From Octopus bimaculoides (Eukaryota), in NCBI RefSeq assembly GCF_001194135.2, contig NC_068984.1, positions 24,009,193 to 24,057,419 of the forward strand: 48,227 nucleotides of DNA, in the 5' to 3' direction. A model generated the notes under the pieces. It saw only the letters and a program-made list of their open reading frames with translations. It did no database searches and was not told the DNA's origin. The position numbers and the translations under genes were made by a program. The number at the start of each line of letters is the position of its first letter. Positions within the stretch are counted from its first letter, which is position 1. Positions 4,082 through 46,495 of this stretch are shown in pieces.

Positions 4082-4125
<44 letters not shown>

Positions 4126-25760: not shown

Positions 25761-27386
25761 CAACGGAAATGTTAGGAAAGAAAAGAAAAAATCTGTATGG
25801 GAGCTGACGTAGCAAACAACTGAACCCTTGCCTCAGAAAATAAAATAGATACATATGTGTGTGTGTATGTATGTATGTATGTATGATTGGATGGATTGGA
25901 TGTATGTATGTATGATTCTGTGAATTGTTTCTGCATCTAGTAATTCATTGTTTTGAGTTCAAATCGTGCAGGCTTTCGACTTTGTATTTTTCATCCTTCC
26001 AAGAATTATCATTTACAGATGATAGTAAAAATAATATCCGGTAAATTTTAGAATAGCAACCTATTTGTTGAGAAGCTGTTCAGTACATTATTCATTCAGT
26101 CATTTTACTCCTTATATACGGAACATATCCAGGGAAGATATAATAAGATAAGAAAAAAACAGGTAGTAAGATTGGACAGAGTGAGCATATTTGAGAAATA
26201 TAACGGATGGTTGCTGGAATTGGTAGAGTGTCGGACAAAATATTTTTGATATTTCGTAATGTCCGTTTGCGTTCTGAGTCCAAACTGCGCCTAGGTTCAC
26301 TTTACTTTTCATCGTTCTGAGGTCGTTATCAATAAAATAAGGGCTGCTGTCGATGTATTTCATTATACTTTAGAAAGGCAAAAAAAAAAAAAAAAAAGCA
26401 ATTTTAAAGGCTGCCGTCGAGACGAAACGATATCAACAAGCTCTCTAATCAAATGGTAGTACAACTTCTTGTGGCTGAATTAAGTAATACGAATTGTTTA
26501 TATATCTTACATTTAGAGTTATGTTATTTGTATAAGATATTGAAGTGGGTTGTTCATTTAAGTAGGGTTTTATATAAAGCCAAATCTCATCAAAAAGCTG
26601 GATCTTGGTTTGTAAATATTCCTCTAGAGGCTTAAAAGTAAAATATTTATTCAGATCAGCGATATAAAGCAGTGAACAAAAATCGAGTGCAGTACGCTCT
26701 ACGTTGTGATAAAATTTGAAGAGTGCATCACAAGTGAATGTATTTGTCTTGTAAAGTTTGTTTAAGCTGATATTGTTAGTAATCTATTGACTCAGTTCAA
26801 TGTATGAGCTGCGGTTTATCTTATTGACCTCGGGGATTTGAAATGTAATACAGTTACAGGCGAAATTTGAACTCAAACTCATTTAGAGCGAAAATAAATA
26901 CTGTAAAATAAAGAGCGTTAACCAATTCTGCCACACTTTTAGTGAGCCGATATCAAGTGTCATATAATAGCGTGATGTAATATTCAGCTATATAATTTTA
27001 GGAAAACTTAAATCGCGTCGTTAAAACAAAGTTTAGTCATCATTTTTTTTTTTTTTTTTCATGATTGTAATTTATTCTCCAGCTTTAGAAATGTTATGTA
27101 AACAAAGTTGTTTTTACAAAGAGTAAGCTGGGTGCACATAGCAAAATACACACGCACGCGCGCACACATACACACACACACACACACACAAAAAAAAAAC
27201 ACACACACACACACACACAAAAAAAACACACACACACGCATATACACTTGCCTACACATATAGGCATACAAAAGTATATGCGAGCACAAACACAGACATG
27301 CAAAAGAACATAAAAGCACGCACACACATACATGCACACACGTACGCACAAACACACACACACACACACATACATGCACACATGCC

Positions 27387-27424
<38 letters not shown>

Positions 27425-27504
27425 NNNNNNNNNNNNNNNNNNNNNNNNNNNNNNNNNNNNNNNNNNNNNNNNNNNNNNNNNNNNNNNNNNNNNNNNNNNN
27501 NNNN

Positions 27505-27545
<41 letters not shown>

Positions 27546-27904
27546 TACACACACTCGTATCACATCACTTTTTTTTCAGAACAAGACATTTATACATTTC
27601 CCTTATATTTTCTTTCGCTGCCCCACTCCTGATGTCCGCCTCCTCATCTTCTTACTCTTTCCCTCGTCGTTTTCCATCATATCAACTTTGTCACATGCTA
27701 AACATTTATTTATTTATTTATTATTTACTAACTTTAAATGATAACTGATATTGATTGATCTTATTCATTTTAAAGCAAATATTTTTCTTTAAAACAAATC
27801 TAGTTATTATCTACATATATGTAGATATGCGGTTACTTAGATTTCTCAAATTATCAACATGGTTTCAACGCACTTTCAATTGATTGGTGTCAACTCTTAG
27901 AAGC

Positions 27905-27990
27905 TTAACCAATCAAAAGCAATGTAACTACCGGACTGGGCGTATTACAACCCTTATAAAGATTTAATTTCAAGTGTTTTCAGTTCGTAG
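27905..27990 (+). promoter_or_regulatory. Pol II core promoter of the secreted-peptide gene
   Basis: CCAAT 27909-13, TATAAAG 27955-61, Inr TCAGTT 27980-85 (A at 27982, 27 nt after TATA start); CCAAT and TATA conserved in the paralogous block at 46441-46490. Confidence 0.75.
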
Positions 27991-28017
27991 ACGTAATCTC
28001 AAGAGAACTAAGTTGAG
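27982..28017 (+). other. Non-coding exon 1 (5' UTR) of the secreted-peptide gene
   Basis: Starts at the Inr; ends at consensus donor GAG|GTAAGT (28018-23); no ATG. Confidence 0.65.
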
Positions 28018-28204
28018 GTAAGTGGCATTAGCTAATGGTTTGTTTAATTTTCCTCGTTGTTATTCTAAATTTTGGAAATCGTATATGAACTCAAGAATTG
28101 TTATGAAACTTTGCTGTTGTACATTTTAGCCATCTCAGAGTTATTCATTTATCCCGTTGTTAAATGTAGGCAAGTGGTTGAATCGTTATGATAACGGCTG
28201 GCAA

Positions 28205-28246
28205 AATAATAATAATAATAATAATAATAATGACGATGAGGATGAC

Positions 28247-28288
<42 letters not shown>

Positions 28289-28292
28289 GATG
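28205..28292. repeat. (AAT)n(GAT)n microsatellite
   Basis: Direct reading. Confidence 0.95.
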
Positions 28293-29656
28293 ACAACCTA
28301 GCAGTGTTTAGTTACGTCCCTTTTTGTTCTGAATTTAAATGCCACCGACGCTTTTTACTCTTTTTGGGGTTGATAAAATTAATATAGATACTAGTTATAT
28401 TTTGGAATAGATTTAATTGAATGTACCAACTAACAAAATTTATTGCCACTTGCCTATGCTAGACATAATTTATTCTATTCGGTGAGGTTTCGATCCCGAT
28501 GTTCTAACCCATTAAAACACATCAATTTCCTGTTAGTCCAGAGCTCCCACTGCAGTATTTCATACATAACAGTATTAGTGGTTGCATGAACTCATTGCAA
28601 TCGAAAGACCAATATTTGATCCAGTTCTCGAACTCTCGACAAATATATGTTTGGATATTTCGAATCTTGAGTAATATCATAATCATTAAAGTTAGTTTGT
28701 ATTTTTTCCAAGTTTCTTATTTCTTATTTATTAAAGACTATTTTCATCATTAACGTCCTTCTTGTTTATTCTACTATCATCTTACACGTTTTCCAACACC
28801 AAAACTAACATCACCACAGCCAGTAGTACCACCAACACTACCACTGCCACTACCACAAACATCTTCCTAACTCTAACTTAATTCGTGCCAGACAAGTAAT
28901 TAGTTAACCACCACACCAATCACTTAACTATCTACATTCGTGTATCATGTTTGTCGGTTAATTACTTATGTCGATTCTACTGTTTAACCTCAGAGCATGA
29001 CATAATGACATTGTACCAAGCAAAGATTATTTCACGAAGGAAACAAAAAGGAGGTGGTAGAGAAAATAGTATCCAAGGAACTGGAGGTACTCTGCGCTGT
29101 CACCGAAAACTATATACAGCATGTGAACTTATCCAAACTCATGAACTTCGCTTTGTAGATTATTTCGTACGATAGTTAATGTGTTTGAATGAAGACATAA
29201 CAACTGCTAGTAAAAAGTACGAATGATGTTAACCGTTTCAGTTCTTTGTTTCTTATCTTTGTTTTCTCGTTGACTGATATATCACATATAAATGAAAACA
29301 AGATGGTTGTCGCTCTAGCACTGTCAAAGCAAACTTAACTAATTTCATGAAGACAAACAATATATGAAAGTGGTTTTATTTCAGCTGTCACTTCTAATAG
29401 AGATTTACTCAGATTGCAAATGTATTGTTAGGAGTAGAAAATATGAATTTCAACAAGATGGAAAGCAACTTGTTTTAGTGTCAGAATTTCGATTCAGTCA
29501 AGCAAAACGGCATTAAATGTTTTGGTGTTTTATTGTTTTCTTTTTTTTTTAATAAAATAGAGACAAAAAGTATCTTAATTAGGTAAATACTAATTAAAAG
29601 TTGTCTCTCTCTACAGACAAGGATGTAAATAAAGTATTTCATAATAATTCTTTCTA

Positions 29657-29855
29657 ATTTTGACACAAGGCCATCAATTTTGAGGGGAGGGGCAAGTCGA
29701 TTACATCAACCTCAGTACTTATCGGGTACTTTATTTCATCAACTCCGAAAGGTTGAAAAGCAAAGCTGACCTCGGCAGGAATAGAAATCAGAATGTAAAG
29801 AGCCGGAAAAAATGAAAGACATTTCAACCGACGCTCTAACAATTCCGTCAGTTAA
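29657..29855 (-). mobile_element. Diverged family A SINE
   Basis: CCGAAAGGTTGAAAAGCAAAGCTGACCTCGG body, homologous to 5752-5960. Confidence 0.75.
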
Positions 29856-30491
29856 CAGGCTTCAGGTATTTCATAATAATATTCGTCATCAATAATGACT
29901 TATTACTTGTAGAGCCTTATTAGTATTAAGGCTTTAGATTAGTCTTTTAGTTATCAATCTACAGCTTTTCTTCATTAACTTCCTTCTTATTATTCTCCCA
30001 TTATCTTACACACCTTCCATCATCAGAACTAACGCTACCAACAACAACAGCAACAACAAGAACACCACCACCACCAACAACAACGCCATCATTAATAAAG
30101 AAACATAATAAGAAAAACAAAAGACAAAGAATGTACAAGTAAAGCTGCACCTACTGACTTGGTGTTTTACAACTCAACGCAAACAACAGTGTCAGGGTGA
30201 AAATGAAGATGGGTGTACCAAGGATGATGTTTGTCGAATGAAATAAGAAAATTAGTGCAATGTTTAATTTACAAGCATAGGTCAGAACATTTAATAACAA
30301 AGACCTATTGTCAGATCAATTGATCTAGCTGTGCTAATTATTTAAACTTGATGACAAAGGCTGTGTTCGTTTAATGGGATATAAAAAGTCAAAGTATTCA
30401 GCTGCTGAATTTTTATGCAAACCATTTTTTATTGTTATAATGTACATTTAATTTCCTTAATAACAACAAGTTAAAGTTGGTCTGCTCCAGA

Positions 30492-30994
30492 CACTAGCGT
30501 TGCTAGTGGGCGGTAGGGGCGGTCCGCCCCGGGCGCGAACTTTTTTCCCCACGGAAGTTTCGGGTAATGAACTTGAACTCGTTTGGATGGGGAAAATGTG
30601 GATAGAGGGTGATGTGCTAGCAACCCTCTCTCTTACCATTTTATAACGTAAACAACATCACAAATAACTAAGCAGAGGCAGCCATGGTTGAAACAAGAAC
30701 AAGAACGACAAACATTATTAAAAGAGGAAAGAAGCATGGTCATTCCTTACCCATGTGGCCTTATCTTATCGCCCATCACTTGTTATGTGCTCATAAATTA
30801 GTTTGATAGTTGAGCTTTAATTGGCTGTATGCAAATGAGATCATAACTGGAGTCCGGAACTCTCGTGGGAAAATAATTTCGCGCCCCGGGCAGTATTTTG
30901 GGGTTTGTTGTAGGCAATATGTGCTTTTGTGGGGTCCGGGGGCGGCAAATGGAATGGCCGCCCCCGGACGGCACACACTCTAGCTACGCTAGTG
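30492..30994. mobile_element. hAT-type MITE, 503 bp
   Basis: TIR CACTAGCGT(T/A)GCTAG; perfect 8-bp TSD GCTCCAGA at 30484-91 and 30995-31002. Confidence 0.92.
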
Positions 30995-31139
30995 GCTCCA
31001 GAACAAAAAGTGAAATGTTGTGACATTATATAACAAATGGGAATGTTAAACCACTTCCCACTCTATACGCACAACCAAAAACAAACATATTTGTGTATAT
31101 AATCATACATATATGTACACGTGTGTGTGTGTGTGTGAC

Positions 31140-31950
31140 ATCTTATTCGGTATCTTGTTGGTTTCTCCAAACATTGTGCATGTTTCATTGTGCTGTTCGC
31201 TATTCACGGTTCAGTCACCGTTCCAGAAAGTCAAAGACAATGACGCCTTTGTCACCGTCCAACGTAGTCACCATAACATTTTAATATTGATCTATGACTT
31301 TTGAACTTGTTAGGCCTTAGAGAAGAGGTGTAACGCCATTTCAAGGACTAAGTTTTCGCTTCCAGATCATAAAGATACATCCACGTTTCGTGCCTTGTCA
31401 CCAGATCGGAAAAATAACGTGTTTTCGTTCACTACAAACGCTTCCAGCACAGGAGAACACTTCACGTCTTCAAATCTAGTATCAGTCTTCCACCGTCTTT
31501 TGTTATGCATAATGACCACAATCCTTTTGTGCAAGAAGCTCACCGACTGTGGCTCGTCTGTCCTCGCGAATCAATTAGTCCAACCGCTAGTGACTCCTGT
31601 CACTGGTCACAGTTGATCGTCTCTCACTACGAGGTTTATCTTCATTGCTGGTTTCCCTTCCTTAAACTTCTTCATCTATGTGTGCACATTCCTCTTGTCA
31701 ATGATGTCATCTCCATAAACAACCTGCAGCCTTCAATGGATGTCTAACAGCTTGCATCCCTCCTTCGACAGGAATTCAATGACAATATGTTGCTTCCCTT
31801 CAGAACCCATTATTTTCCAGCAATAAAGAACAAGAAGACCTACTACAGAGGAAGAATTACTCAACCAAAATGTGCAATTTGAATGACCAATGTCAGTTAA
31901 TAAAAGAGCTATGCCCACTTTCGCATTATTTTCGGTACAAGCCCGTTTTC
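31140..31950 (-). mobile_element. Decayed mariner transposase fragment
   Basis: Minus frames KQHIVIEFLSKEG, LIREDRRATV, VTRHETWMYLYDLE (TGDETW..YDPE-like), KGVIVFDFLE. Confidence 0.8.
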
Positions 31951-32397
31951 GTTAAACGTTGTATCAATGTTTTTTGTTTTGTTTTTGTTCCCAGAGTCTG
32001 AGCAATGTCTTGTGGTGTATTACAAATATGCATTATTAAATTCCGTTATAATGTCTGCTAGTTCCTTACAACTTTATTTTAAGCTTTGCAGCATCCAGAT
32101 AGTAAAAGTATGACATTTTAAATGTCAGAAAGTGGGATATATTTCAACTGTCTTAACCAATTATTTCATTTTGCTTAAATCATGCAATTATATGGAATTT
32201 ACTTACAATTAAAGTTATATTAGTAAATTTATGTAGTATTGATATTTTATTGCACCCGAGCTAATCTTGTTCACCAAAATATTTGTATTTATGTTTATAT
32301 AAATGTGCTGATAAGTATATTAAAAACTAACTTTCTTTTATATTTTTAGTTAAAAATCTTCAGCATAATATATCTGCGTAAAATATTTACATACAAA

Positions 32398-32467
32398 ATG
32401 AAAGGTCATTGCATCATCGTCTTCGTCGTATTGATTGCGATATTTGCTGGAATGGCAACGGTCAGCG
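32398..32467 (+). CDS. Coding part of exon 2 (exon 32350-32467): signal peptide MKGHCIIVFVVLIAIFAGMATVS
   Basis: Branch CTAAC 32327-31, pyrimidine tract, AG 32348-49; CAAAATG start context; basic n-region and hydrophobic h-region; phase-1 donor G|GTAAGT 32468. Confidence 0.85.
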
Positions 32468-32739
32468 GTAAGTATTTGATTAATCTTATTCATGTAAATG
32501 AATCGGGGTTGCTATTCAGACCGATAAAGATGTTACCTGTTAAACAATATCATGACAAATCAAAAACAAAAAAACAAAAAAATTAGAAAGACAAAAGAAC
32601 AATAGTTTGACATTTGCTTACTGTAGCATTTTATATGAATTTTTATACATCACGAATAAATCTGGAAAACGCCTGCTATAACAATCTGAATATTCTTGTA
32701 TTTATTTTTTACATTAATTACAAGAGTTACATTAATTGT

Positions 32740-33040
32740 GAAGGCGCGTAGGATATTCGGGTCACGATCGCGAGTTCGTTTGTTAGATTCCAAGCGGCGC
32801 CTTGTGTCCTTGAGCAAGACACTTTATTTCACGTTACTCCAGCTTACTCAGCTGGCAAAAATGAGTTATACCTGTATTTCAAAGGGCCATACTTGCCACG
32901 CTGAATCTCCCTGAGAACTACATTAAGGGTACGCGTTAGTGTAGAGTTGGCTCAGCTACATGCACGTTAATTTCACGGGCAGGCTGTTCCGTCGATCAAA
33001 TCAACTGGGACCTTCATCGTCGTAACCAACAGAGTCCCAG
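32740..33040 (+). mobile_element. tRNA-derived SINE, family C
   Basis: Homologous to 4400-4700. Confidence 0.85.
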
Positions 33041-33245
33041 CTTACATTCATTTCAAGTTCGATGTTGCTAATCATTTCGAATGTTCAGTAACATATTTGA
33101 GGCCTCTAGCTGAAAACCCATTAGAACGTTATACTTCATCATACACAAGTCAGAATATAATTAAAGTAGAAAAAAAATCAGTGAAAATTCCTGAGAAAAA
33201 TGTAAGAATCTTGTAGGTAGATCTAACAAAAAGCATACCATATTC

Positions 33246-33319
<74 letters not shown>

Positions 33320-33459
33320 TTGACTTCAGTGTATTTCAATTTTGTCGTGCGTAAATATCTTTGTCGTCACGCTATTTGTACCATTTCTATTCATATTTTC
33401 AAATATATAATACTCTGCCAAGAACTTTCTATTTCTTATTCTACTACATATATATGTGT

Positions 33460-33495
<36 letters not shown>

Positions 33496-33498
33496 GTG

Positions 33499-34083
33499 TG
33501 TTAAATAAAATGAAACCCCAAAGCCAAAGTTATGTGAAAATTCTAGGACATTTATAAAGAGAAAGGTAGTCTTACAGCTGTTTCAGGGATATAAAAGATA
33601 TCCCATCATCAGAGACGATATGAGAGAGTTAGATAGAAGAAAATAGTAGAGTTCATAAGAAGTTATTTTGGAAAGGAAGAAACATAAGAAGTATACAAGG
33701 AAATAAAAGAATAAAAAAATATATTGGATGTTAAAGTTGCTGTTCCATTATCCAAGGAATGTGTTGTGTAGAATGGGTAAAGAAACTTCTTGTCCATGGT
33801 ATGTAAAAAGCTTCTTTACCCATTCTACACAGCACATTGCATGGATAATGGAACAGCAACTTTAACATCCAGCATATTTTTTTATTCTCATATTTCCTTG
33901 TATATTTTTTATATCTCTCCTTTTCCAAAATAACTTCTTATGCTGAACTTTACTTTTCCTTCTATTTAACTCTCTCATATCGTCTCTTGGGATACCTGAA
34001 ACAGCTGTAAGACTACCTTTCTCTTTATAAATGTCATAGAAATTTCATACCACCTTGGCTTTGTTGTCCCATTTTATTTAACA
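33499..34083. mobile_element. Fold-back element with ~280-bp inverted arms carrying a hammerhead (possibly Penelope-like derived)
   Basis: 33499-33788 is the reverse complement of 33808-34083, with mismatches and indels; ~19-nt spacer; flanked by (GT)n and (CA)-rich tracts. Confidence 0.85.
33569..33616 (-). ncRNA. Minimal type I hammerhead ribozyme motif
   Basis: Minus strand GTCT-CTGATGA-T-GGGATAT-CTTTT-ATATCCC-T-GAAA-CAGCTG-TA-AGAC: 4-bp stem I, 7-bp stem II, palindrome ACAGCTGT, GUA triplet. Confidence 0.8.
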
Positions 34084-34302
34084 TATACACACTCACACAC
34101 GACCCGCATTAGACTCCTCACTGATACTATTATCGAACCAAGAGTCTAATAGCGGTCCTTCCGTAGCACTTACATAACCTTACCTGCCTTTTGGGTCTTC
34201 TGGATACCAAAACATAAGCTCAATTTAATTTTGATTTTTTATAAATCGATTTTAATTGAGTTTTTACCTGTAATTTTGGATTTTGTCCCTAATATTATTA
34301 TA

Positions 34303-34333
<31 letters not shown>

Positions 34334-35392
34334 NNNNNNNNNNNNNNNNNNNNNNNNNNNNNNNNNNNNNNNNNNNNNNNNNNNNNNNNNNNNNNNNNNN
34401 NNNNNNNNNNNNNNNNNNNNNNNNNNNNNNNNNNNNNNNNNNNNNNNNNNNNNNNNNNNNNNNNNNNNNNNNNNNNNNNNNNNNNNNNNNNNNNNNNNNN
34501 NNNNNNNNNNNNNNNNNNNNNNNNNNNNNNNNNNNNNNNNNNNNNNNNNNNNNNNNNNNNNNNNNNNNNNNNNNNNNNNNNNNNNNNNNNNNNNNNNNNN
34601 NNNNNNNNNNNNNNNNNNNNNNNNNNNNNNNNNNNNNNNNNNNNNNNNNNNNNNNNNNNNNNNNNNNNNNNNNNNNNNNNNNNNNNNNNNNNNNNNNNNN
34701 NNNNNNNNNNNNNNNNNNNNNNNNNNNNNNNNNNNNNNNNNNNNNNNNNNNNNNNNNNNNNNNNNNNNNNNNNNNNNNNNNNNNNNNNNNTCTATCAGAC
34801 TTAATATGTCACACACACTCGCTCGCGCACGCGCAACGAAAGGCTTTCTCTTAGTTTCCGTCAAGCGAATTCTATTCAAGATGTCAACACAAAGTATGGT
34901 AGCAAACATTTGCCCAGTGTGCCGTGCAGTATAACAAAAGTAAATGCTATTTGCAAAGATTATCTACAAAACACTTTTTTTTTTGTTTTTGCAACAAATG
35001 TGAAATTTTCTTCTTCCTGACATTTCTTCATTTTCTTTTCTCTTTCGCCAACCGTTACAATTGATATTTGCTTCAATATTCATCAGTTTGTCGTGTTCTG
35101 AGTTCTGATACATTAATGAATGCGTAAGTGAATACATATGTATGGTTGCCTATCGAACTACTTTCTTACATATACCTGCACCTATTTGGAAAACGAATTA
35201 TCTCTAACACTGTGCTTGAAGTAATACATACCTATATATCCAACCTATCGTGAAGTGTAACTACTAAACAAAGTAACAAAATAAAACTGAATTAGAACTA
35301 ACGCACTCACACTTACACATGCATCAGAAGGTGCAATGTTATAACTAATATAAGGGCAATGTTATAACATAAGTGCCATGTTATAACTAACA

Positions 35393-35908
35393 TAGGTGCA
35401 GGAATGACTGTGTGGTAAGGGGTTATCGGTCGGCGGGCGCTGGTACCCCTCCCATTACTATTTCATCTGTGTTGTTATCACCTTCATCCCATTAATGTCT
35501 GCGTCCAGCCCGCAGCTACTTTATGTTTGTCTGTCCTTGTTCGTCCCCTCTTTCTAAGGCCTTAATGGCCAAATTGTTGAAATAAAGTAGCTTGCTTACC
35601 AACCACATGGTTCCGGGTTCAGTCCCACTGCGTGGCACTTTGGGCAAGTGTCTTCTACTATAACATCGGGCCGACCAAAGCCTTGTGAGTGGATTTGGTA
35701 GACGGAAACTGAAAGANNNNNNNNNNCTTGACAACCGATGCTGGTGTGTTTACGTCCCCGTAACTTAGCATTTCGGCAAAAGAGACCGATAGAATAAGTA
35801 CTAGGCTTACAAAGAATAAGTCCTGGGGTCGATTTGCTCGACGAAAGGCGGTGCTCCAGCATGGCCGCAATCAAATGACTGAAACAAGTAAAAGAGTAAA
35901 AGAGAGTA
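35393..35908 (+). mobile_element. Family D SINE with a ~168-bp insertion in its head
   Basis: Head GGTGCAGGAATGACTGTGTGGTAAG (to 35419) resumes at TAGCTTGCTTACC (35588); contiguous in the 9893-10270 copy. Confidence 0.85.
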
Positions 35909-36040
35909 TAATACTGTAGAACCGCAACTGCAGTACTATTTTCTTATTTAGTTAACAACTATATCTATTCCACTATATCTAATTTAAAAACAATATCAAC
36001 GCCAATGCAGTTCTAATATTTAAATATTTTCTAATTGCAG

Positions 36041-36183
36041 CCCGTCCTTCAATCATACTTCCACCAGAGTGTGGAAATGCCTGTTTAGCACATTATGAAT
36101 CAAATCCTAATGAAAGCCGTTCAGTTTCAAAATACATAGGATGCATCAGAAAATGCTGGGAAAAAGCTCGATTTAATAATTGA
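36041..36183 (+). CDS. Coding part of exon 3: mature 46-aa four-cysteine peptide (A)RPSIILPPECGNACLAHYESNPNESRSVSKYIGCIRKCWEKARFNN*
   Basis: Acceptor TTTTCTAATTGCAG|36041; phase 1 completes Ala24 (V-S-A peptidase site); open to TGA 36181-83; CX3C-X19-CX3C. Confidence 0.85.
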
Positions 36184-36397: not shown

Positions 36398-36403
36398 AAT
36401 AAA
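36398..36403 (+). terminator. Putative polyadenylation signal of the peptide gene
   Basis: AATAAA 215 nt after the stop, followed by a GT/T-rich tract at ~36421-36431. Confidence 0.55.
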
Positions 36404-36849: not shown

Positions 36850-37125
36850 GGCATTAGAAGGTTAAGAGCTTCGCTGATGCATGCCAAAGGAGCAAGTAGC
36901 TGTCACGTCGAAGGCATCGCGCTAAAGAGCTTCGTTGAGAAGCACGTTGTTGTCTGATCGAAGGCATCGCGCTAAGAGAGTTAGAAAGTGAAAGAAACGC
37001 TTTAAGTACTGGTTTTACTACGCATGCGCACTCGAGGGGCTTCCGGGAAGGCAAGTCTCTTGCCCATGCGTAGATTGTACTTCCTCAATGGCGGCCATAA
37101 TTTCGCGCCACTACAACCAGTTCCC
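36850..37125. promoter_or_regulatory. CpG-rich, housekeeping-promoter-like motif cluster
   Basis: TACGCATGCGCA (NRF1-like) 37019-30, CTTCCGG (ETS) 37040-46, CAATGGCGGCC (YY1-like) 37086-96, ACTACAA..TTCCCA (ZNF143-like) from 37110. Confidence 0.4.
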
Positions 37126-37536
37126 AAACTGTAAATAATTTCGTTAAAATTTTCTGAAGTATGAATATTGCTACCATGAAATCAATGAACTGCATTGTTG
37201 TCACGTTATTTTGATTATTAAGGGTTCAGGAGATTTTTCTAGTCATCCATACGTTCAGTTAATCATTTGGCGTAGATTCTGTAAACTGTATATTCTCATC
37301 TACAGAAAAACAGCTTTGTTTCTGGTCACAAGAAATCAATATATTATTTTGTTGATAATCAATTCCATGGCGTTCATAAACCCTTCGAAACCTGTGAGAT
37401 CAAGAAGGTTTAATGCTCCCTTACAACAAACAAGAGGTAATCACTTAGATAATCTCTTCTACGAAGACAGTTTTTATTCTCAGTTGAAATCGCATCATTT
37501 TATTCCAGTTATGTCCCTTTAAATATATGATCACAT

Positions 37537-37920
37537 TTGTATTGTTGGCACTCCGTCGCTTACGACGTCGAGGGTTCCAGTTGATCCGATCAACGGAACA
37601 GCCTGCTCGTGAAATTAACGTGCAAGTAGCTGAGCACTCCACAGACACATGTACCCTTAACGTAGTTCTCGGGGATATTCAGCGTGACAGAGTGTGACAA
37701 AGCTGACCCTTTGAATTACAGGTACAACAGAAACATTGAGTAAGAGTGAAAGTTGTGGTGAAATAGTACAGCAGGGTTCGCCACCATCCCCTGCCGGAGC
37801 CTCGTGGAACTTTAGATGTTTTCGCTCAATAAACACTCACAACGCCCGGTCTGGGAATCGAAACCGCGATCCTATGACCGCGAGTCCGCTGCCCTGACCA
37901 CTGGGCCATTGTGCCTCCAC
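37537..37920 (-). mobile_element. Full-length family C SINE with 12-bp TSD
   Basis: TSD ATATGATCACAT at 37525-36 and 37921-32; antisense tRNA head at the right end. Confidence 0.92.
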
Positions 37921-39866
37921 ATATGATCACATATGCACCTAAAAATCATTTTACTTTACACAGAGTTTGAATGCACTGTTTATTCTATCGAGTTGGCTGA
38001 TGTTTTTTGTTCCGATCGCAGTTGATTTGCTTGCACTTTTATTATCCAGTCATCCAGAGTTGACTAAGTACAAGTAATATTACGATACTAAATCTCGATC
38101 AAATATGTTTTTATCTAGCAAATATGCTCCTCCTTCCATGGAAAATCCCAAGTTTTCTCATTCATACCGACTGATGAGAATTAGGGACTCCCACAACGCA
38201 TACCCTAGCAGATATCATTCAGGGGATTATTTTCTTTAGTCCAGTGATAACGTTGTTCATTCCAAGGTTTTGTGATAATATACGACTAGTTTTATGTCGT
38301 TTCATGTTGTATAGCTACTGATGTCTCTTGAATCATCAACAATCTGTGAAAGCTGTGATATAAGGGAGATGGGAGAAGTGAAACCCTTGGGCACTATCAA
38401 GTTTTTGTCCGTATTCAATTTTGAAATCACCGCGTGCGAAATCGCTAAAAACGCTTTAAAAATACAGTTTAAGCCTAAGAGCAATACAGTAAGTTATATT
38501 TATACTAAGCTCTCCTCTATGCAACAACACAATGGATAACTTAATTCATAACTGATAAATCGTGCAACATACATATACTTTGCTCTTAGGTTTAAACTGT
38601 TTTCCATGCGTTTAAATGGATAGGTAAATGGATATGTAAGTGTAAGGAACGACCGTGCGAACTCAAAAAGGAGAAATGGTGACGAATGGAAAAACAGAGG
38701 ACTCCTTTTATTTAAACGTGTCACACGGTCGAACACAAAATATATATATCAGATATGATGATATACATGATATGTTATGCGACGATAACATAGATGACCA
38801 GTAATGAAAGACCACAACCGTATAAGATGAATAACAGAGATATTTATTATGGCGTTAAAGATGTATGTCTGTGTGAGAGTGTGAATGCGACATATAAGAA
38901 CATAATCAAAGACAGGCCGTCATACAAAGAAAAGTATGTATGTGAGTTATTACAGCAAATAGAAAGAGTCAATAACACGTGAGCAATTATACCAGTTCTT
39001 TAGTACACTATAGGAAAAGTTCTGTATGTGAAGTTGGGGAGNNNNNNNNNNNNNNNNNNNNNNNNNNNNNNNNNNNNNNNNNNNNNNNNNNNNNNNNNNN
39101 NNNNNNNNNNNNNNNNNNNNNNNNNNNNNNNNNNNNNNNNNNNNNNNNNNNNNNNNNNNNNNNNNNNNNNNNNNNNNNNNNNNNNNNNNNNNNNNNNNNN
39201 NNNNNNNNNNNNNNNNNNNNNNNNNNNNNNNNNNNNNNNNNNNNNNNNNNNNNNNNNNNNNNNNNNNNNNNNNNNNNNNNNNNNNNNNNNNNNNNNNNNN
39301 NNNNNNNNNNNNNNNNNNNNNNNNNNNNNNNNNNNNNNNNNNNNNGATGCTGGATAGTAGTCGTAGACTCTTGTTGCTGATGTGGCGACGGCGGTGGTCA
39401 TCGTTGGCTGGACGAAGCTGTTGAAGTGGTCGCTGGCTAATTGTTGCTGCTGCTGTCGTGTGGTACACGGAACAGATCTCAAAGAGAAACTGGACCGAGA
39501 CAAATTTGTTGGGTATGAGTTAAAGCTATTTATAACAAACTATCGGCTCACCGGATATCAGAAATATACTCTATCGCGTGACCTTATTAAGGGCTGTGAT
39601 TGGTCAGTTTGCGTTCTGGCGGGAACGGTTCGAAGAAGTTGCCGATTCGAATAATGATCAGTCACGTAATGAGAAGGTTAATGTTTTCCGCTACGTTCGC
39701 GTTTGTTTATATTTAAATGAGAAGAATGGCGATAGCAGTTTTGTATCTAATGGCGATAGGTAGTTTTGTATGTAATGCCGATCGAGGTGTTAGTTTCACT
39801 ACATAAGTAAACAGATAGATAAAGAGATATAGATGGGTACATAGGCAATACGGAGTGACACGCACG

Positions 39867-39918
<52 letters not shown>

Positions 39919-40103
39919 NNNNNNNNNNCACAAACACAAACACACACACACACATACACACATACACAAATAAAGACTGAAACACTCGACCATATACACA
40001 CTCACATAAGGACACAAGGAGACACACATCCATACATAACAGATGCACATACGTAGTCGCACAAACCCATACAAAGACACACTCAAACATGCATATACAA
40101 GAG

Positions 40104-40147
<44 letters not shown>

Positions 40148-40189
40148 AGCATTGCTGTGACACATTTAAATCAAGGCAACATCTATCTG

Positions 40190-40725
40190 AAGACAGTTCT
40201 GGTCGGTTAGCCTGAATTTCCCAATCAGTTTGTTCATTGAAATTAAAGGCATTCGGCAATTCGGCACAACTTGCAGTGGTTTATATTCCTAGATATTCTC
40301 TTTGAGACCAGTATATGTATAGAGTTGCTCGGTCATGTTGTTGCAAGTACTCTGTTGACGTCAATCAACAGCATCCAGATATTACGAGGTCGATTGCATC
40401 TGGACGTCTGCATACGTGACATGATGGGCTGCTTTCATGTTTCGGACCACACAATGTTGTTATTCAGGACATCATGACAAAAAATTTCTAGTTATTGGTG
40501 AAATTTTGAATGTTTCCAGGCATTCCTCTATCCAGCTGTGAAGAAAACTGTCAAAGGTTTCTTTGTAGTCTATCCAGGCCATTGCGAGATTTATGCGCCT
40601 GTTATGACAATCATCAAGAATCATTTTCCTAATTAACAGTTGATCTTTGCCGTCATATGACCCATTTCGCACCGTTTTTCTTCATCGGAGAAAATGCTGT
40701 TAATGAGGAAAGCATAAGTGGTGAT
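40190..40725 (-). mobile_element. Internally deleted R4/Dong-type LINE
   Basis: GKDQLLIRKMIL..AWIDYKETFDS..HSWI (RT) joined almost directly to CHVC..DLVISGC..EY..HD and WEIQANRP-like motifs. Confidence 0.8.
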
Positions 40726-40747
40726 GGGTTGTTGTTGTTGTTGCTGT

Positions 40748-40778
<31 letters not shown>

Positions 40779-41328
40779 AAGGCTGGCGAATCTAGTTAAA
40801 CTGATTCACAAAATCTGCATTTTTTAAATAGAAGAAAACTATCTGAAAATCGGTTATATTAATGTAGTTTTCCACTCTTATAGCTATGAAGGCATGATGT
40901 TGTGGAGAAAAATTGGAGGAAAAAGTTATAGAGGTTTAAAAATCGAAAAAAACCGTATTTTTAGCCAATAGCGAGACAGACTTTCTGCGTTTAGCGGTTT
41001 CAACTTTAAAGTTGTACCCTGTGAAATTTATAGTTTAGCGTCTGTGAAATTACGTGTTCACTGTAGGTTTCTAAATAAACAGAAATACCGAATAAAATCA
41101 ACATGTATCATTTTATTGTTTCTTTTGTCTCTTCGTTGATTTCTATAGTGTTTTGTATGTTTTTATTATTTTTTAAATTTGTTATATTAATATATTTTTC
41201 TGCTTGTGTTTAATTTATGCGTATTTCTGTATTATGCATACCTGTCGTGTATTTGTGTATGTCATTAATATATAAGTGCATGTGGATGCATGTATTCATA
41301 TATAAGTTTATATGTACATTTATGCATT

Positions 41329-41371
<43 letters not shown>

Positions 41372-41730
41372 CTGTGTGTCTGTGTGCCTATATGTCTGTG
41401 TGTGTGTGAAACGGGGGCGTCTATCTTCAAAACTCCAAACGTTTTCATGCTTGGATTTGTAAACTACGATAAGAATAACATTGGTCAACAAAGAATTTGC
41501 CCCAAGGAAAAGAATGCCTGTATCTTATATGTTTTTGCATGCAGAATTCAAAAACAATGTCAGATTATCTGTATCACCCATAGTTTCTCTGTTCCACAAT
41601 ATCCCTCTCAGTTCCTGTTATGTGGGCTAAATTTCAGTTAAGCTGTTGAAATGTGAAGCTAACGGTTTAAGAAATTCTCCTAATTTAAATGTTTATGAAT
41701 TGAATTAACCTAGTGAAATCATAAATCCAG

Positions 41731-41815
41731 CTGAGTCAATGAGTCCCTGAAGCTTGGCAATACTGAGTCAATGAGTCCCTGAAGCTTGGCAATACTGAGT
41801 CGATGAGTCACCGAT
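41731..41815 (+). repeat. 32-bp tandem repeat (2 perfect units plus 1 degenerate) rich in TGAGTC(A)
   Basis: CTGAGTCAATGAGTCCCTGAAGCTTGGCAATA at 41731-62 and 41763-94. Confidence 0.9.
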
Positions 41816-42321
41816 GCTTTGTCAGTTACTGTGCTTGAAGTGTAGATGCGCGGTTGTGTACTAAGTTCACGTATTCCATTCACCTACATAATGCCAAGAA
41901 ACTATATGAACATCGCAAACAACTTTTGCTATATATGAAAAATATGTAAAATATTAAGACAACTGACGAAACATATCTATAATAAAATTCTAATTGATGA
42001 ATATAAATTTTTATTAAAATAAAACACGCGGGTGAAGTAAATCTTGTGGTGAGAAGAATCAACACGACGTGCGAGTGAAGTGAAACACAACACAACGTGG
42101 GGTTGTCACGGTAACTACCTGTTAATGCCTCGCTGTCTTTTGATTGGCTAAAATTATCCAAATTTCCCACTTTCATTCCAAATGACATCAGATTCTTTAA
42201 TTTACAAGATAAAGTAATTGGTTGATCGTAATCAAAATTCAGAGTTGCATCGATAGATAAAAATTGAAAGCAATCTGAGCAAAATTAAAGGGGCTGATTT
42301 TGTGAATCAGTTTGTCTAGAT

Positions 42322-42528
42322 CCAGGCGGGTAGCATCGTTAGTCCACCTAGCAAAAGGTTTATTGGCACTTCGTCCATCTTCATGTTCTGAGTTCAAATT
42401 CCACCGAGGTTGACTTTGCCTTTCATCGTTTCCAGATCGAGGAAATGAATTCCATTGAACACTAGGGGCGATATAATCAACTTACCCCTCCCCTAAGACT
42501 GCTAACCTTGTGCCAAAATTTGAAACCA
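42322..42528 (+). mobile_element. Diverged family A SINE
   Basis: GAGTTCAAATTCCACCGAGGTTGACTTTGCCTTTCATC. Confidence 0.8.
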
Positions 42529-42575
42529 TTATTATTATAGAATGAGAGAACAGTGCATGCCAAATTATTATTATT

Positions 42576-43266
42576 CCTTCGTAACACAGTGTAGGCAAAA
42601 ATGCACCGGAGTCTTTAGTCATCTGTCAAGTCACAACAAGGACCTCAGACTGATAATACTTTCCTTAAGATGTGCGCTGTGCCCAATAAAGCTGCTTTTT
42701 GCAAGACATCAATCTTGCATGGGATTTCCAGTGGGCCTTAAGAAGTCTTGAAGCTTCAATGAGACTGAGACCAACGCTCCGATCACCACTGGTATCACTT
42801 TTACATTACCCTCTCGTATTACATACTGTCTTGTCATTTCTACTTTCAATTCAGAGTATTTGGTGATTTTTTTCAACCTTTTTACTCACAGCATTCATGT
42901 CATTTAGTATGGCTACATCAATGATCTGACAGTATTTGTCTCTCTTATTCAATTTGACAATATCTGGCCAATGGTGTTCGATTACACGATCCATCTGAAA
43001 ATCATAGTCCCAGAGTATCGTTACTTTTCCATCCTCCTGCTTAACTTTACTTGGTACATGCTCATACCAGTTCTCTGTTACTTCATATTGGTATTTACAA
43101 CATAAGAGCCAATGAAGATACGTACACATTTTATCGTGGAGGCGTTTGTATTCTTTTTGTGCAAGGCTCCCACATCCACTTACCAAGTAGACCACATTTT
43201 CCACACTCTTTCCACAGAGTCTGCATTTCTTGGTGTCAGAAGTTTTATAGATGTTATACTTCACTG
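42576..43266 (-). mobile_element. R4/Dong-type LINE 3' part (CCHC plus restriction-like endonuclease)
   Basis: KCRLCGKSVENVVYLVSGC..LAQKEYKRLHD, ILWDYDFQMDRVIEHHWPDIV, IIDVA; (AAT)4 at the 3' end. Confidence 0.92.
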
Positions 43267-43267
43267 A

Positions 43268-43299
<32 letters not shown>

Positions 43300-43669
43300 C
43301 ATCATCATAATCATTATCATCCTCGTTATTATTNNNNNNNNNNNNNNNNNNNNNNNNNNNNNNNNNNNNNNNNNNNNNNNNNNNNNNNNNNNNNNNNNNN
43401 NNNNNNNNNNNNNNNNNNNNNNNNNNNNNNNNNNNNNNNNNNNNNNNNNNNNNNNNNNNNNNNNNNNNNNNNNNNNNNNNNNNNNNNNNNNNNNNNNNNN
43501 NNNNNNNNNNNNNNNNNNNNNNNNNNNNNNNNNNNNNNNNNNNNNNNNNNNNNNNNNNNNNNNNNNNNNNNNNNNNNNNNNNNNNNNNNNNNNNNNNNNN
43601 NNNNNNNNNNNNNNNNNNNNNNNNNNNNNNNNNNNNNNNNNNNNNNNNNNNNNNNNNNNNNNNNNNNNC

Positions 43670-44682
43670 TGTAACATGTGGGATGGATCTATCGGCCGAG
43701 TTCATAGTGATGATTTCCCCTCCGCCATCCTTTAATCGGGCAGGTGAGGCAGTTTTCCTTTGCCTTGTGGCTGTGGTGAAGGAGGTTATCTGGTGGACGA
43801 GGTTGAAAAGCATGAGAACAGATACACTTGCTAATCAGTCAGGTATTTTAATAGGATCTCCCATGATTTAATTGAACAGCCGAACTAATTTTTCGTGTGT
43901 GCACGGGAGAGAAGAGAGCCTGAAATCTGGCACCCTGTCTTTACTAAATGATTTCCACTTACGAGCCTTTGTGATGATCTTCCTTAGGCCTGCTATTGTG
44001 ATGTCTTGCCATGGTTGTTCTTGTAAATGTTGATAGGAGCCTTTTGTGCGTCTAACCCAATCTGCATTTTCATTGTATGTCTTATCAGTCCAAATGTTTT
44101 CCAAAAGTTTTCAGTTTCTTCCATTGGAGGGAGATCTTTAATGGTTATTTTTTTCTCCTTTCCTATTTCCCTGCAAAATGTTTTTACATTGGATGTCAAC
44201 AGCTTATTTTGCTGGTAAAAATTATTTCGTTTCTCAAATCTTTGTATTTTTTTAGCTTTTACTTGGACTTTTCGTTTCAATGTTTCTTTTGTTGATATAA
44301 GTTCTTCTCCTGATGAAAATCCATATTTTATCTTCCTCTTTCTTCCTTTTCTGAACCTTACATCATTTCCCAGATTGGTTCATCTAATATTGATATTCCC
44401 CCTCTCATTAAGTGAATCTCTTTTTCAATTTTACTTGTTTGAATTTCATCCAAGGTTTGGTTTTCTTCGTTTTTCGCTGGTATACAACTTGTTTCAATTG
44501 CCTTAGCAGATGCATAAATAATTCTATTTAACTCAGTAAGATCAGGTCTTAATTCTTGTATAATTTCTTTTGTTACATAACTGCCAATTTTTATATTTTT
44601 TTTAATTATTTTAGTTTGTATTTGAGAGTTTGTGAAGTGGTTCTCCATCATTCATACTTGTATGTCTTACAGCTGCAAACTC

Positions 44683-44685
<3 letters not shown>
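43670..44685 (-). mobile_element. R4/Dong-type LINE 5' ORF part through early RT
   Basis: ELNRIIYASAKAI, ENIW...YNENADWV, DITIAGLRKIITKARKWKS...HEKLVRLFN; frameshifted. Confidence 0.8.
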
Positions 44686-44718
<33 letters not shown>

Positions 44719-45012
44719 CATTATTATTATTACTATTATTACTATTATTATTATTGAACAAACGTCCATATCAGAGATCACATGAAAAAATAATTAACCG
44801 GATTACATAATGTTAAACAGGTTTTGATGCAAAAAGGAGTCATTCACCAATAAAAGGCTTCAGAATATTTGAACATCTTCCTCATTACACTGCCTGGAGT
44901 AGAAAAACAGATTCTTCGAAACAACATCTTTTTAACCGTATATATATATATATATANNNNNNNNNNNNNNNNNNNNNNNNNNNNNNNNNNNNNNNNNNNN
45001 NNNNNNNNNNNN

Positions 45013-45051
<39 letters not shown>

Positions 45052-45825
45052 CATATATATGTATATATATGTGTGTGTATGTATGTATGTATGTACATAT
45101 ATTGTACAGCTGCTATTTGTATTGCTATTGGTGGCTCAAATGGCCTCAAGGTGAGAGGAAGATGTTTATTTTAAAGTGATAGTGGCTGTAACCACAATAT
45201 TGTAAATAATCACGTACCCTAAGTATTTTTACATACGAAAAGGGATTAACAAAAATAGACAATATAAAAATTAAACAGACTAAGTTTGATGTTACACAGT
45301 AGAAAACAGAAAAAAAAATAGAGTGTATTGAGAACAGTAATTTAAATGAGAAAATGTATAAACAGCATGAAAAACAACGACATCACCTCCAAAAGCAACA
45401 GCACTTCATCCTTTCCAAACCTTATGAGTCATAAAGAGCTTTTCAATATGAACCAGCAATATTTACCCTGGGTAAATTACTGGAGTAAGGAATCAAGTCA
45501 CTTATGTCTTTTACTCTTGACTTAATTTCCAGTGAATGAAATATCTAATAGAAACACTGGAAGCTGAAACAATGACGTTAATTATTTCTTCCCAAAATTG
45601 ACATATTCAACACTTAATGAGTTCTGTTCCATTGCATGATTTTGGTTGTATCTGGTGGGAAGTCTTTGATCCTGTGCCGCAACAAAAATCTTTAACTTTC
45701 AACTTTGTGTTCTTCGCCACTTAGCCAATGCTGTGATTTTTTGTCACCCATCTCCACCATGTGCGCCTATATAAAAAGCTACGCAACAGTATGCAAAATT
45801 CAATTGCTCAAACTGTGCCGTAAAT

Positions 45826-45944
45826 ATAAAGTTTAGTCATCATTTTCTCGTACAAAATCATAATTTCTTCTACAGTTTTAAGAATGTTATGTAAATAGAC
45901 TTGTTTTTACAAAACGAAAGCTCGGTGTACACAAGGAAGTCATA

Positions 45945-45987
<43 letters not shown>

Positions 45988-46495
45988 GCACATGCAAGAT
46001 ACAAATAAATATATGCGCTCACAAGCAAGACACACACATACACACAATATTTTGTTTTCTATCAAAATAAGGCATTTATACTCTTTCTCTATTTTTCTTT
46101 CTCTCTTCTCGTTATAAGTACTGCTCCTGTCTCTCCTTTCTTCATCTCTTTTCACCATAATAACTCTTACTCAGATTAAATATAATTCATTTAACCATTA
46201 TTTAATCATTCCAAATCATGATTGATATTGATCAGGTTTACTTTAAAACGAATAAATTTCTTTAAAACAAATGTAGTTATCTCCATACTTGTTTATGTAT
46301 AATTATTACGTTATAGTCACATTGTTAACACCGCTTCAATACATTTACAACTGATGTGTGTTAACATTAGCACATTTACTACTAACAGTTTCAACTTTAA
46401 TACTTTTGCAGACGACAGGTTATAATTATAAGAAACCTAGCCAATCAGTGAGACTCAAGTAACAGACTAGCGTATCACAACCTATATAAATGTAT
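45826..46495 (+). promoter_or_regulatory. Diverged paralogue of the peptide-gene upstream region and promoter
   Basis: Shared AAAGTTTAGTCATCATTTT, AATGTTATGTAAA..TTGTTTTTACAAA, TTTCTTTAAAACAAAT.TAGTTAT, CCAATCA (46441) and GCGTAT.ACAACC..TATAAA (to 46490) with 27025-27975. Confidence 0.8.

What the first reader, a model, noticed from the sequence alone, without database searches (positions are those of the whole stretch)
27025..46495. Duplicated promoter block implies a tandem family of the peptide gene
27025-27975 and 45826-46495 are collinear diverged homologues. They keep CCAAT, a GCGTAT(T/C)ACAAC element and TATA in similar spacing while the microsatellites between them differ. The shared motifs act as a phylogenetic footprint supporting the promoter call. 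Inference: a paralogue starts just beyond 46.5 kb, with coding exons outside the window or lost. Tandem expansion is typical of toxin and defence peptide genes.
Basis: partly seen in the sequence, partly recalled or inferred. Interest (0 to 1): 0.75.

Follow-up and report, generated by a model that had tools for sequence, protein, structure and literature searches.

The report
Orphan duplicate of a peptide-gene promoter
The stretch just upstream of a small octopus secreted-peptide gene really does occur a second time 19 kb downstream, but this old second copy runs straight into a jumping-gene insertion and assembly gaps and no second peptide gene is found in the genome, so it looks like a leftover of an old duplication rather than evidence of a gene family.

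Summary
Window 27007-27965 and 45807-46493 are collinear, diverged homologues (self-BLAST E 2e-33 and 6e-18). The CCAAT / GCGTATYACAAC / TATA register beat all 1000 shuffles.

The peptide gene has a 5'UTR exon at about 27985-28017 and coding exons at 32350-32467 and 36041-36183. It encodes 70 aa: a signal peptide plus a twin-CX3C helical hairpin. It is real and conserved in Octopus vulgaris (90% aa identity, dN/dS 0.34). But its signal exon and mature-peptide exon are each single-copy in the 2.34-Gb assembly, and 41.7 kb downstream of copy 2 holds no exon-like match.

Copy 2 is equidistant from copy 1 and from the O. vulgaris orthologue of copy 1, so it predates that species split. About 5 bp after its TATA box it abuts an antisense SINE. 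Then come an 861-N gap, a young high-copy transposon piece and a 2650-N gap.

The best reading is an orphan relic of an old duplication. The conserved motifs are not a specific footprint. A hidden paralogue in the gaps is not excluded. This is an ordinary finding of low interest.

The parts
27007..27965 (+). Copy 1 of the duplicated block, the 5' flank of the peptide gene. It comprises a distal conserved part (27007-27140), an (AC)n microsatellite (27148-27554, holding the 80-N gap 27425-27504), a middle part (27555-27900) and the proximal promoter-like part.
   Evidence: Self-BLAST; shuffle tests; TRF. Identity to the O. vulgaris orthologue is 87-97%.
27909..27961 (+). Copy 1 core motifs: CCAAT 27909-27913, GCGTATTACAAC 27940-27951, TTATAAAG 27954-27961.
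   Evidence: CCAAT and TATAAAG are conserved in O. vulgaris; the middle element there reads GTGTATTACAAAC.
27985..28017 (+). Putative non-coding exon 1 (5'UTR) of the peptide gene. The start is approximate; it ends at the donor GAG|GTAAGT (28017|28018). It has no ATG. This exon is inferred, with no transcript evidence.
   Evidence: Sequence. Identity to O. vulgaris is 97.6% over 27976-28017, and 27942-28091 is a >=98% identity stretch against a 90% locus mean.
32350..32467 (+). Exon 2. The acceptor is TTTTAG| at 32349, the ATG is at 32398, it encodes the signal peptide MKGHCIIVFVVLIAIFAGMATVS, and the donor G|GTAAGT is in phase 1.
   Evidence: It is single-copy in the genome.
36041..36183 (+). 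Exon 3 coding part, giving the mature peptide ARPSIILPPECGNACLAHYESNPNESRSVSKYIGCIRKCWEKARFNN plus a TGA stop. An AATAAA signal lies at 36398-36403.
   Evidence: It is single-copy in the genome by translated search. The O. vulgaris orthologue is CAI9720819.1.
45807..46493 (+). Copy 2 of the duplicated block. It carries (AT)21 at 45942-45983 and about 45 bp of extra sequence before its CCAAT.
   Evidence: K2P distance is 0.29-0.54 to copy 1 and 0.27-0.56 to the O. vulgaris copy 1.
46441..46489 (+). Copy 2 core motifs: CCAAT 46441-46445, GCGTATCACAAC 46470-46481, TATATAA 46483-46489.
46494..46728 (-). A SINE in antisense orientation. Its 3' tail abuts copy 2 about 5 bp after the TATA box, and its body runs into the 861-N gap (46729-47589).
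   Evidence: It is 91% identical to the SINE at 35727-35898. Alignment with five other copies, including a full-length O. vulgaris copy with a tRNA-like head, fixes its end and orientation.
47590..47964 (.). A piece of a young, high-copy dispersed repeat (55% G+C) lying between two gaps downstream of copy 2.
   Evidence: At least 44 copies in the genome, up to 96-99% identical; G+C content.

Best explanation
The second block is an orphan relic of an old local duplication of the peptide gene's 5' flank. It is not the start of a living paralogue.

Shown:
- A segment of at least 0.7-1 kb, ending at or beyond the TATA box, exists twice in direct orientation 18.8 kb apart and nowhere else in the genome.
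- The copies differ by K = 0.3-0.5.
- Copy 2 is as far from the O. vulgaris orthologue of copy 1 as from copy 1 itself, so the duplication predates the split of the two octopus species several-fold.
- Copy 2 now abuts a SINE in antisense orientation about 5 bp after its TATA box.
- No second copy of either coding exon exists in the assembly.

Inferred:
- The event was a tandem duplication of an ~18.8-kb unit (27007-45806). This fits the fact that copy 2's left flank is simply the tail of unit 1, with no homology left of 27007.
- The duplicated gene body later decayed or was deleted in this transposon-rich region. Alternatively, only the 5' flank was ever copied.
- The SINE arrived late. It is ~9% divergent from a SINE in intron 2 that is absent from O. 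vulgaris. It separated the TATA box from whatever start site copy 2 had.

Copy 1 remains the plausible but untested promoter of a single-copy, Octopus-restricted gene. That gene encodes a 70-aa secreted precursor whose 47-aa mature part is predicted to be a disulfide-stapled helical hairpin (twin CX3C).
For: - Homology and its significance.
- Two copies only in 2.34 Gb. One search shows that the same search returns at least 44 copies for a real repeat.
- Coding exons are single-copy: mature exon; signal exon plus flanks.
- The 41.7 kb after copy 2 hold no exon homologue: BLASTN, TBLASTN, twin-CX3C scan, and a signal-exon heuristic that recovers the true exon as its only hit in the control.
- No collinear unique homology exists beyond the block; every other shared piece is a multi-copy repeat.
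- Three-way distances place the duplication before the species split.
- SINE end and orientation.
- The gene is real: O. vulgaris orthologue with the same two coding exons and conserved splice sites, all four Cys kept, an in-frame one-codon indel, dN/dS 0.34.
- Predicted hairpin: helices at residues 31-43 and 51-67, pLDDT about 85-88.
Against: - Of the first 4.4 kb after copy 2, about 3.5 kb are Ns (46729-47589 and 48228-50877 in extended coordinates). By analogy with copy 1 (+30 bp and +4.4 kb), that is exactly where exon 1 and exon 2 of a paralogue would lie. Further gaps follow.
- A paralogue diverged as far as the promoter (K 0.3-0.5) with a fast-evolving mature peptide could escape a 47-aa translated search of 2.3 Gb.
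- The core stretch GCGTATYACAACC..TATAAA is 20/26 identical without gaps. That is somewhat better than the block average and could reflect past or present constraint.
- The O. vulgaris counterpart of copy 2 could not be examined. Collinearity stops at window 45762, 45 bp before copy 2, and the O. vulgaris locus continues with at least 1.97 kb of other sequence, partly dispersed repeats and a SINE, to the end of the fetched DNA.
- No transcript data were available for either copy.
Confidence: 0.6

Rival explanations
1. A true paralogue exists. Copy 2 would be its promoter, and its exons would lie in the assembly gaps, in unassembled sequence, or be too diverged to recognise.
For: Copy 2 keeps CCAAT, the GCGTATYACAAC element and TATA in register. 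About 3.5 kb of the next 4.4 kb are Ns. Small peptide genes are easily missed: the window's own peptide is not on record as a called protein.
Against: No second signal exon or mature exon exists anywhere in the 145,327 contigs. None is found in the sequenced 37 kb downstream, where exon 3 would be expected at about +8 kb. O. vulgaris has no annotated relative. The TATA box is now followed by a SINE.
Confidence: 0.15
2. Copy 2 is functional non-coding DNA. It could be a promoter for another transcript (for example a non-coding RNA that starts in the SINE, or a distant gene with a long first intron), or a downstream enhancer-like duplicate acting on the same peptide gene.
For: The block has remained recognisable since before the species split. 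The sub-blocks best kept between the copies (27007-27140) are also 97% identical between species, against a 90% mean.
Against: No host gene is evident in 40 kb downstream, only transposon debris. 22% of all 60-bp windows in the locus are >=96.7% identical between the species, so 97% is not exceptional. The start site is displaced by a SINE. No expression data exist.
Confidence: 0.15
3. The blocks are two copies of an old low-copy mobile element, for example the two LTRs of a decayed retrotransposon that encloses the gene. On this reading the promoter-like motifs belong to the element.
For: The blocks are direct repeats of ~0.7-1 kb in the same orientation that carry TATA-type motifs, as LTRs do. 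The window is full of transposon remains (RVT_1 hit).
Against: Only two copies exist genome-wide, although the search detects 65-67% identical matches. The 18.8 kb between them holds a conserved host gene on the same strand and no + strand gag/pol. The reverse-transcriptase-like ORFs I noted lie on the - strand (16839-17198, RVT_1; 40475-40681 and 43996-44651, judged by eye, with no Pfam hit). By eye, the bases before 45807 show no purine-rich tract of the kind that precedes a 3' LTR.
Confidence: 0.05
4. Copy 2 is an assembly artefact, such as a misplaced haplotype or a chimeric contig.
For: The assembly is gap-rich, and copy 2 sits at the point where collinearity with O. vulgaris ends.
Against: 23-38% divergence is far beyond allelic variation. 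The junction with O. vulgaris-collinear DNA lies inside one ungapped contig, 45013-46728.
Confidence: 0.05

Closest known systems
Partial or degenerate tandem (segmental) duplicates that leave an orphan promoter or 5'-flank relic
   Same: A low-copy, local, direct-orientation duplicate of non-coding 5' sequence, much older than the species split, with the gene body missing and later transposon insertions.
   Different: The right edge of the duplicate is hidden by a SINE and an assembly gap. It therefore cannot be shown whether the gene body was ever copied.
Tandemly expanded secreted-peptide families (conotoxin-type organisation: conserved signal exon, variable mature exon)
   Same: The same gene layout as many such genes: a short 5'UTR exon, a signal-peptide exon ending in phase 1, and one Cys-bearing mature exon. 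The Pfam chi-conotoxin hit (E 0.15, residues 4-26) falls on the hydrophobic signal only and is below threshold.
   Different: There is no second signal exon or mature exon in the genome. There is no family and no sequence relative outside Octopus.
Cystine-stabilised helical hairpins (twin CX3C), known from own knowledge in some secreted arthropod and plant peptides and in the mitochondrial small Tim proteins
   Same: A C-x3-C ... C-x3-C pattern with each pair on one of two predicted antiparallel helices.
   Different: No sequence or fold match to any solved structure. The peptide carries a secretory signal, unlike the mitochondrial proteins. Function is unknown.
tRNA-derived SINEs of octopus genomes
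   Same: The element abutting copy 2 matches many copies. The full-length O. vulgaris copy has a head that, by eye and from own knowledge of box A/box B motifs, looks tRNA-like, then a central microsatellite and a conserved tail.
   Different: Only the tail half is assembled here. No target-site duplication can be read because the head lies in the gap.

Membership tests
Tandem paralogous peptide-gene family | At least two homologous coding units (signal exon and mature exon) near each other | tested here: not met
   The mature exon and the signal exon with flanks are each found once in the 2.34-Gb assembly. Nothing is found in the 88 kb read locally.
Tandem paralogous peptide-gene family | Homology between units extends from the promoter into the transcribed region | tested here: not met
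   Homology stops at 27965/46493. The sequence after copy 1's TATA has no significant match to what follows copy 2 (z = -1.9 and 1.5). Only multi-copy repeats are shared further on. 3.5 kb of Ns leave this open for exons 1 and 2.
   With either copy as query, only the two local copies are found. The positive control for the method is a neighbouring repeat, which gives at least 44 copies.
LTR pair of a retrotransposon | Solo or paired copies elsewhere; a purine-rich tract before the 3' LTR; gag/pol between the repeats on the same strand | tested here: not met
   No other copies exist. No purine tract is seen by eye before 45807. The reverse-transcriptase-like ORFs noted in the window are on the - strand (RVT_1 at 16839-17198; 40475-40681 by eye), and a conserved host gene lies between the repeats.
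Functional RNA polymerase II core promoter (TATA/CCAAT type) | A mapped transcription start about 25-35 nt after the TATA box | not testable with these tools
   No transcript or CAGE data are available. The motif pair alone is not rare: 5 found against 2.6 expected.
Functional RNA polymerase II core promoter (TATA/CCAAT type) | Conservation above the neutral level in an orthologue | tested here: inconclusive
   27942-28091 is >=98% identical to O. vulgaris against a 90% mean, but 22% of all windows are >=96.7% identical. The species are too close for this test.
Twin-CX3C helical-hairpin peptides | Four Cys arranged as C-x3-C ... C-x3-C on two antiparallel helices | tested here: met
   In the 70-aa window precursor the motifs are C34-x3-C38 and C57-x3-C61. 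In the 69-aa O. vulgaris protein that was modelled, the corresponding residues 33, 37, 56 and 60 lie in the predicted helices 31-43 and 51-67. The pattern is conserved between the two species. Disulfide pairing was not tested.
Twin-CX3C helical-hairpin peptides | Detectable homology to a described member | tested here: not met
   Nothing in Pfam, PDB sequences, PDB folds (all E > 1) or 1.84 billion representative proteins (only the query itself).

The most novel reading that the evidence does not exclude
Copy 2 is still a live promoter. It would drive a second, strongly diverged member of an Octopus-only family of secreted twin-CX3C hairpin peptides whose exons sit in the unassembled 3.5 kb after 46728, or a transcript that starts in the antisense SINE. 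In that case the locus would be a young, lineage-restricted two-gene peptide cluster with a SINE-remodelled start site.
Probability: 0.12. Interest if true: 0.35.

Novelty: new member of a known kind. Interest (0 to 1): 0.15.

Why it matters
Mostly as a correction. A duplicated promoter-like block is not evidence of a gene family unless the coding exons are duplicated too, and here they are not. The locus is a clean small example of how old local duplicates decay in a transposon-rich cephalopod genome. It also flags an unannotated, Octopus-restricted secreted hairpin peptide gene that is conserved between two species and under moderate purifying selection. Its expression site and function would be worth a look in existing RNA-seq data.

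Tried and rejected
- **Alternative alignment register.** I tested a register in which copy 1's TATA pairs with TTATAAG at 46427 and copy 1's exon 1 pairs with 46434-46480.
- **Exon 1 as an old SINE tail.** MAFFT put the two side by side, but the shuffle test gave z = -1.9. Rejected.
- **Homology left of the block** (26600-27006 vs 45400-45806): none, z = -0.6.
- **Homology between copy 1's downstream sequence and the post-gap piece 47590-48227:** none. That piece is a high-copy repeat.
- **Rfam and tRNA scans of the whole window:** nothing.
- **Pfam, PDB sequence and Foldseek searches for the peptide:** nothing significant.
- **Exact look-up of the window's 70-aa product:** not on record, so no transcript-derived contig could be used to test exon 1.
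- **Searching the O. vulgaris genome for copy 2:** the tool does not hold that genome. The fetched O. vulgaris locus ends 1.97 kb after the break in collinearity, and that stretch is partly dispersed repeat and holds a SINE.
- **Literature search for the peptide sequence:** no paper. A general search on octopus SINEs and duplications gave nothing specific to this locus.
- **Species-level footprinting:** the two octopus species are 90% identical across the locus, too close to single out motifs.

Full report
**Setting.** The window is G000:C4:24009193-24057419 of a 2.34-Gb assembly in 145,327 contigs. It has 36.5% G+C and 16 runs of N. Its one recognisable host gene has a 90% identical protein in Octopus vulgaris. 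The genome is therefore an Octopus species close to O. vulgaris. I infer from the assembly's size and state that it is probably O. bimaculoides; this was not tested.

**The gene the finding refers to.** Reading the sequence gives the following model.
- Exon 2 is 32350-32467. Its acceptor is TTTTAG|, the ATG is at 32398, and the donor G|GTAAGT is in phase 1.
- Exon 3 starts at 36041 after TTGCAG|, the stop codon is 36181-36183, and AATAAA lies at 36398-36403.
- Together they encode 70 aa: MKGHCIIVFVVLIAIFAGMATVS-ARPSIILPPECGNACLAHYESNPNESRSVSKYIGCIRKCWEKARFNN. This is a signal peptide plus a 47-aa part with C-x3-C ... C-x3-C.
- The O. vulgaris protein CAI9720819.1 (69 aa, 'hypothetical predicted protein') is encoded by the same two exons with the same splice sites in locus L010, where the gap scan found no N.
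- All four Cys are kept and the only length change is one whole codon. dN/dS is 0.34 (8 non-synonymous and 6 synonymous changes). So the gene is real.
- AlphaFold2 on the single O. vulgaris sequence predicts two helices (residues 31-43 and 51-67, pLDDT about 85-88), each carrying one CX3C.
- Nothing similar is found in Pfam, PDB sequences, PDB folds or 1.84 billion representative proteins. It is an Octopus-restricted orphan, and none of these searches assigns it to a toxin or defence family.

**The observation.** The two blocks are homologous.
- Self-BLAST gives E 2e-33 and 6e-18.
- Shuffle tests give z = 19 for the distal part and z = 15.6 for the middle part. For the proximal CCAAT-to-GCGTAT register, none of 1000 shuffles reaches the observed score.
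- A competing register is no better than chance.
- Motif coordinates are given.
- The microsatellites differ as stated.
- The gap at 27425-27504 lies inside (AC)n and does not touch the homologous parts.
- All other gaps within the finding are intronic or intergenic. They are bridged by a collinear chain to the O. vulgaris locus: window 25652-45762 = L010 1-20916, 63% alignable, 90% identical.

**Is it a dispersed repeat?** No. With copy 1 (27530-28020) or copy 2 (45807-46476) as the query, the whole genome returns only the two local copies. The same tool returns at least 44 copies for the repeat at 47590-47964.

**Age.** On shared columns, K2P distances are 0.03-0.06 between copy 1 and its O. 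vulgaris orthologue. They are 0.29-0.54 between copy 1 and copy 2, and 0.27-0.56 between the O. vulgaris copy 1 and copy 2. Copy 2 is thus an outgroup to both orthologues. The duplication is several times older than the species split.

**What follows copy 2.**
- Homology to copy 1 ends at 46493, about 5 bp after TATATAA (46483-46489).
- From 46494 the sequence is the tail of a SINE in antisense orientation. It is 91% identical to the copy at 35727-35898.
- Alignment with five other copies, including a full-length O. vulgaris copy whose other end looks by eye like a tRNA-derived head, fixes its end and direction.
- The SINE runs into an 861-N gap. Then comes a 375-bp piece of a young high-copy repeat, then a 10-N gap, 253 more bases, and a 2650-N gap just beyond the window.
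- That the SINE was inserted between the TATA box and the start site is an inference. Its far end and target-site duplication are in the gap.

**Is there a paralogue?**
- The mature exon finds only itself in the genome. The next hit has E = 8 and an internal stop.
- The signal exon with its conserved flanks finds only itself. This matters because in expanding peptide families the signal exon is usually the best-conserved part (own knowledge).
- In the 40 kb fetched downstream, BLASTN at word size 8-9 finds only multi-copy repeats.
- TBLASTN at E up to 50 finds only noise.
- A six-frame twin-CX3C scan finds only the known exon.
- A signal-exon heuristic that recovers the true exon as its only hit in a control finds nothing downstream.
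- The downstream ORFs are transposon debris.
- The weak point is the Ns. About 3.5 kb of the 4.4 kb after copy 2 are unread, and this is where exons 1 and 2 would lie by analogy with copy 1.

**The O. vulgaris side.** Collinearity stops at window 45762, 45 bp before copy 2. From there O. vulgaris has at least 1.97 kb of unrelated sequence, partly dispersed repeats and a SINE, up to the end of the fetched locus. Copy 2 of this genome hits only O. vulgaris copy 1 within L010. I could not determine whether O. vulgaris has copy 2 further on, because the tools do not hold that genome.

**Is the block a promoter, and are the motifs a footprint?**
- Copy 1 has CCAAT and TATA 45 bp apart. It then has about 55 nt without an ATG ending in GAG|GTAAGT.
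- Exon 2 begins at a strong acceptor 48 nt before the ATG, which argues for an upstream non-coding exon.
- The TATA-exon 1-donor stretch (27942-28091) is >=98% identical to O. vulgaris against a 90% mean. However, 22% of windows are >=96.7% identical.
- The CCAAT-TATA pair is not rare in this A+T-rich DNA: 5 found against 2.6 expected. One further pair lies at 45725-45775.
- Between the copies the longest exact runs are TTTCTTTAAAACAAAT, AAAGTTTAGTCATCA, TTGTTTTTACAAA and AATGTTATGTAAA. None of them is one of the three motifs.
- The middle element is altered in O. vulgaris.
- The promoter call for copy 1 is therefore plausible but unproven. The 'footprint' adds little, although the core GCGTATYACAACC..TATAAA (20/26 identical, ungapped) is among the better-kept stretches.

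**Conclusion.** The duplicated block is real, local, two-copy and old. The inference of a tandem peptide family is not supported.
- Best explanation (0.6): an orphan relic of an old tandem or partial duplication, now abutted by a SINE.
- A hidden or very diverged paralogue: 0.15.
- Another function for copy 2: 0.15.
- A low-copy mobile element: 0.05.
- An assembly artefact: 0.05.

The finding is ordinary. The orphan hairpin-peptide gene is the more interesting by-product.

Noticed in passing
window 32350-32467 and 36041-36183 (+): Single-copy gene for a 70-aa secreted precursor with a twin-CX3C, predicted helical-hairpin mature part. It is conserved in O. vulgaris (CAI9720819.1, 90% aa identity, dN/dS 0.34) and has no relative in Pfam, PDB or 1.84 billion representative proteins. 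The window's own product is not on record as a called protein.
   Followed up: yes
window 35585-35921 (+), and L010 about 3809-4197: SINE insertions differ between the species. The sense-strand SINE in intron 2 of the window has no counterpart in O. vulgaris (window 35351-35907 corresponds to 2 bp in L010). O. vulgaris instead has an antisense SINE in intron 1, about 100 bp after exon 1, that the window lacks.
   Followed up: partly
window 45725-45775 (+): A further CCAAT...TATATAA pair lies 30-80 bp upstream of copy 2. It straddles the point (45762) where collinearity with O. vulgaris ends. The CCAAT is shared with O. vulgaris; the TATA part is not.
   Followed up: partly
window 46333-46431 (+): Copy 2 carries about 45-55 bp of extra sequence before its CCAAT. 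Both 46333-46387 and 46388-46431 resemble copy 1's 27860-27900 (GTTTCAAC...), which suggests a small internal tandem duplication in copy 2. Its significance was not tested separately.
   Followed up: partly
window 47590-47964: A G+C-rich (55%) piece of a young dispersed repeat with at least 44 copies in the genome, up to 96-99% identical. It has no Pfam hit on its longest ORF, and its family was not identified.
   Followed up: partly
window 16839-17198 (-): Reverse-transcriptase fragment with a YLDD motif (Pfam RVT_1, E 3e-18). By eye, further transposon-like ORFs lie at 9053-11164 (-, mariner-like), 22187-22782 (+), 40475-40681 (-) and 43871-44651 (-). The seven of them put to Pfam gave no family at its threshold; the best was a weak helix-turn-helix hit, E 0.006, for 10768-11007.
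   Followed up: partly
window 28205-28293 (+): (AAT)9 followed by (ATG)21 in intron 1, just downstream of the putative exon 1. It reads as a long Asn/Asp run in one frame but is not an exon.
   Followed up: no
window 38641-39804 and 41635-43906: Two stretches of 1.2 and 2.3 kb, each holding an assembly gap, have no counterpart in the O. vulgaris locus. They are lineage-specific insertions or deletions in the intergenic region between the gene and copy 2.
   Followed up: no
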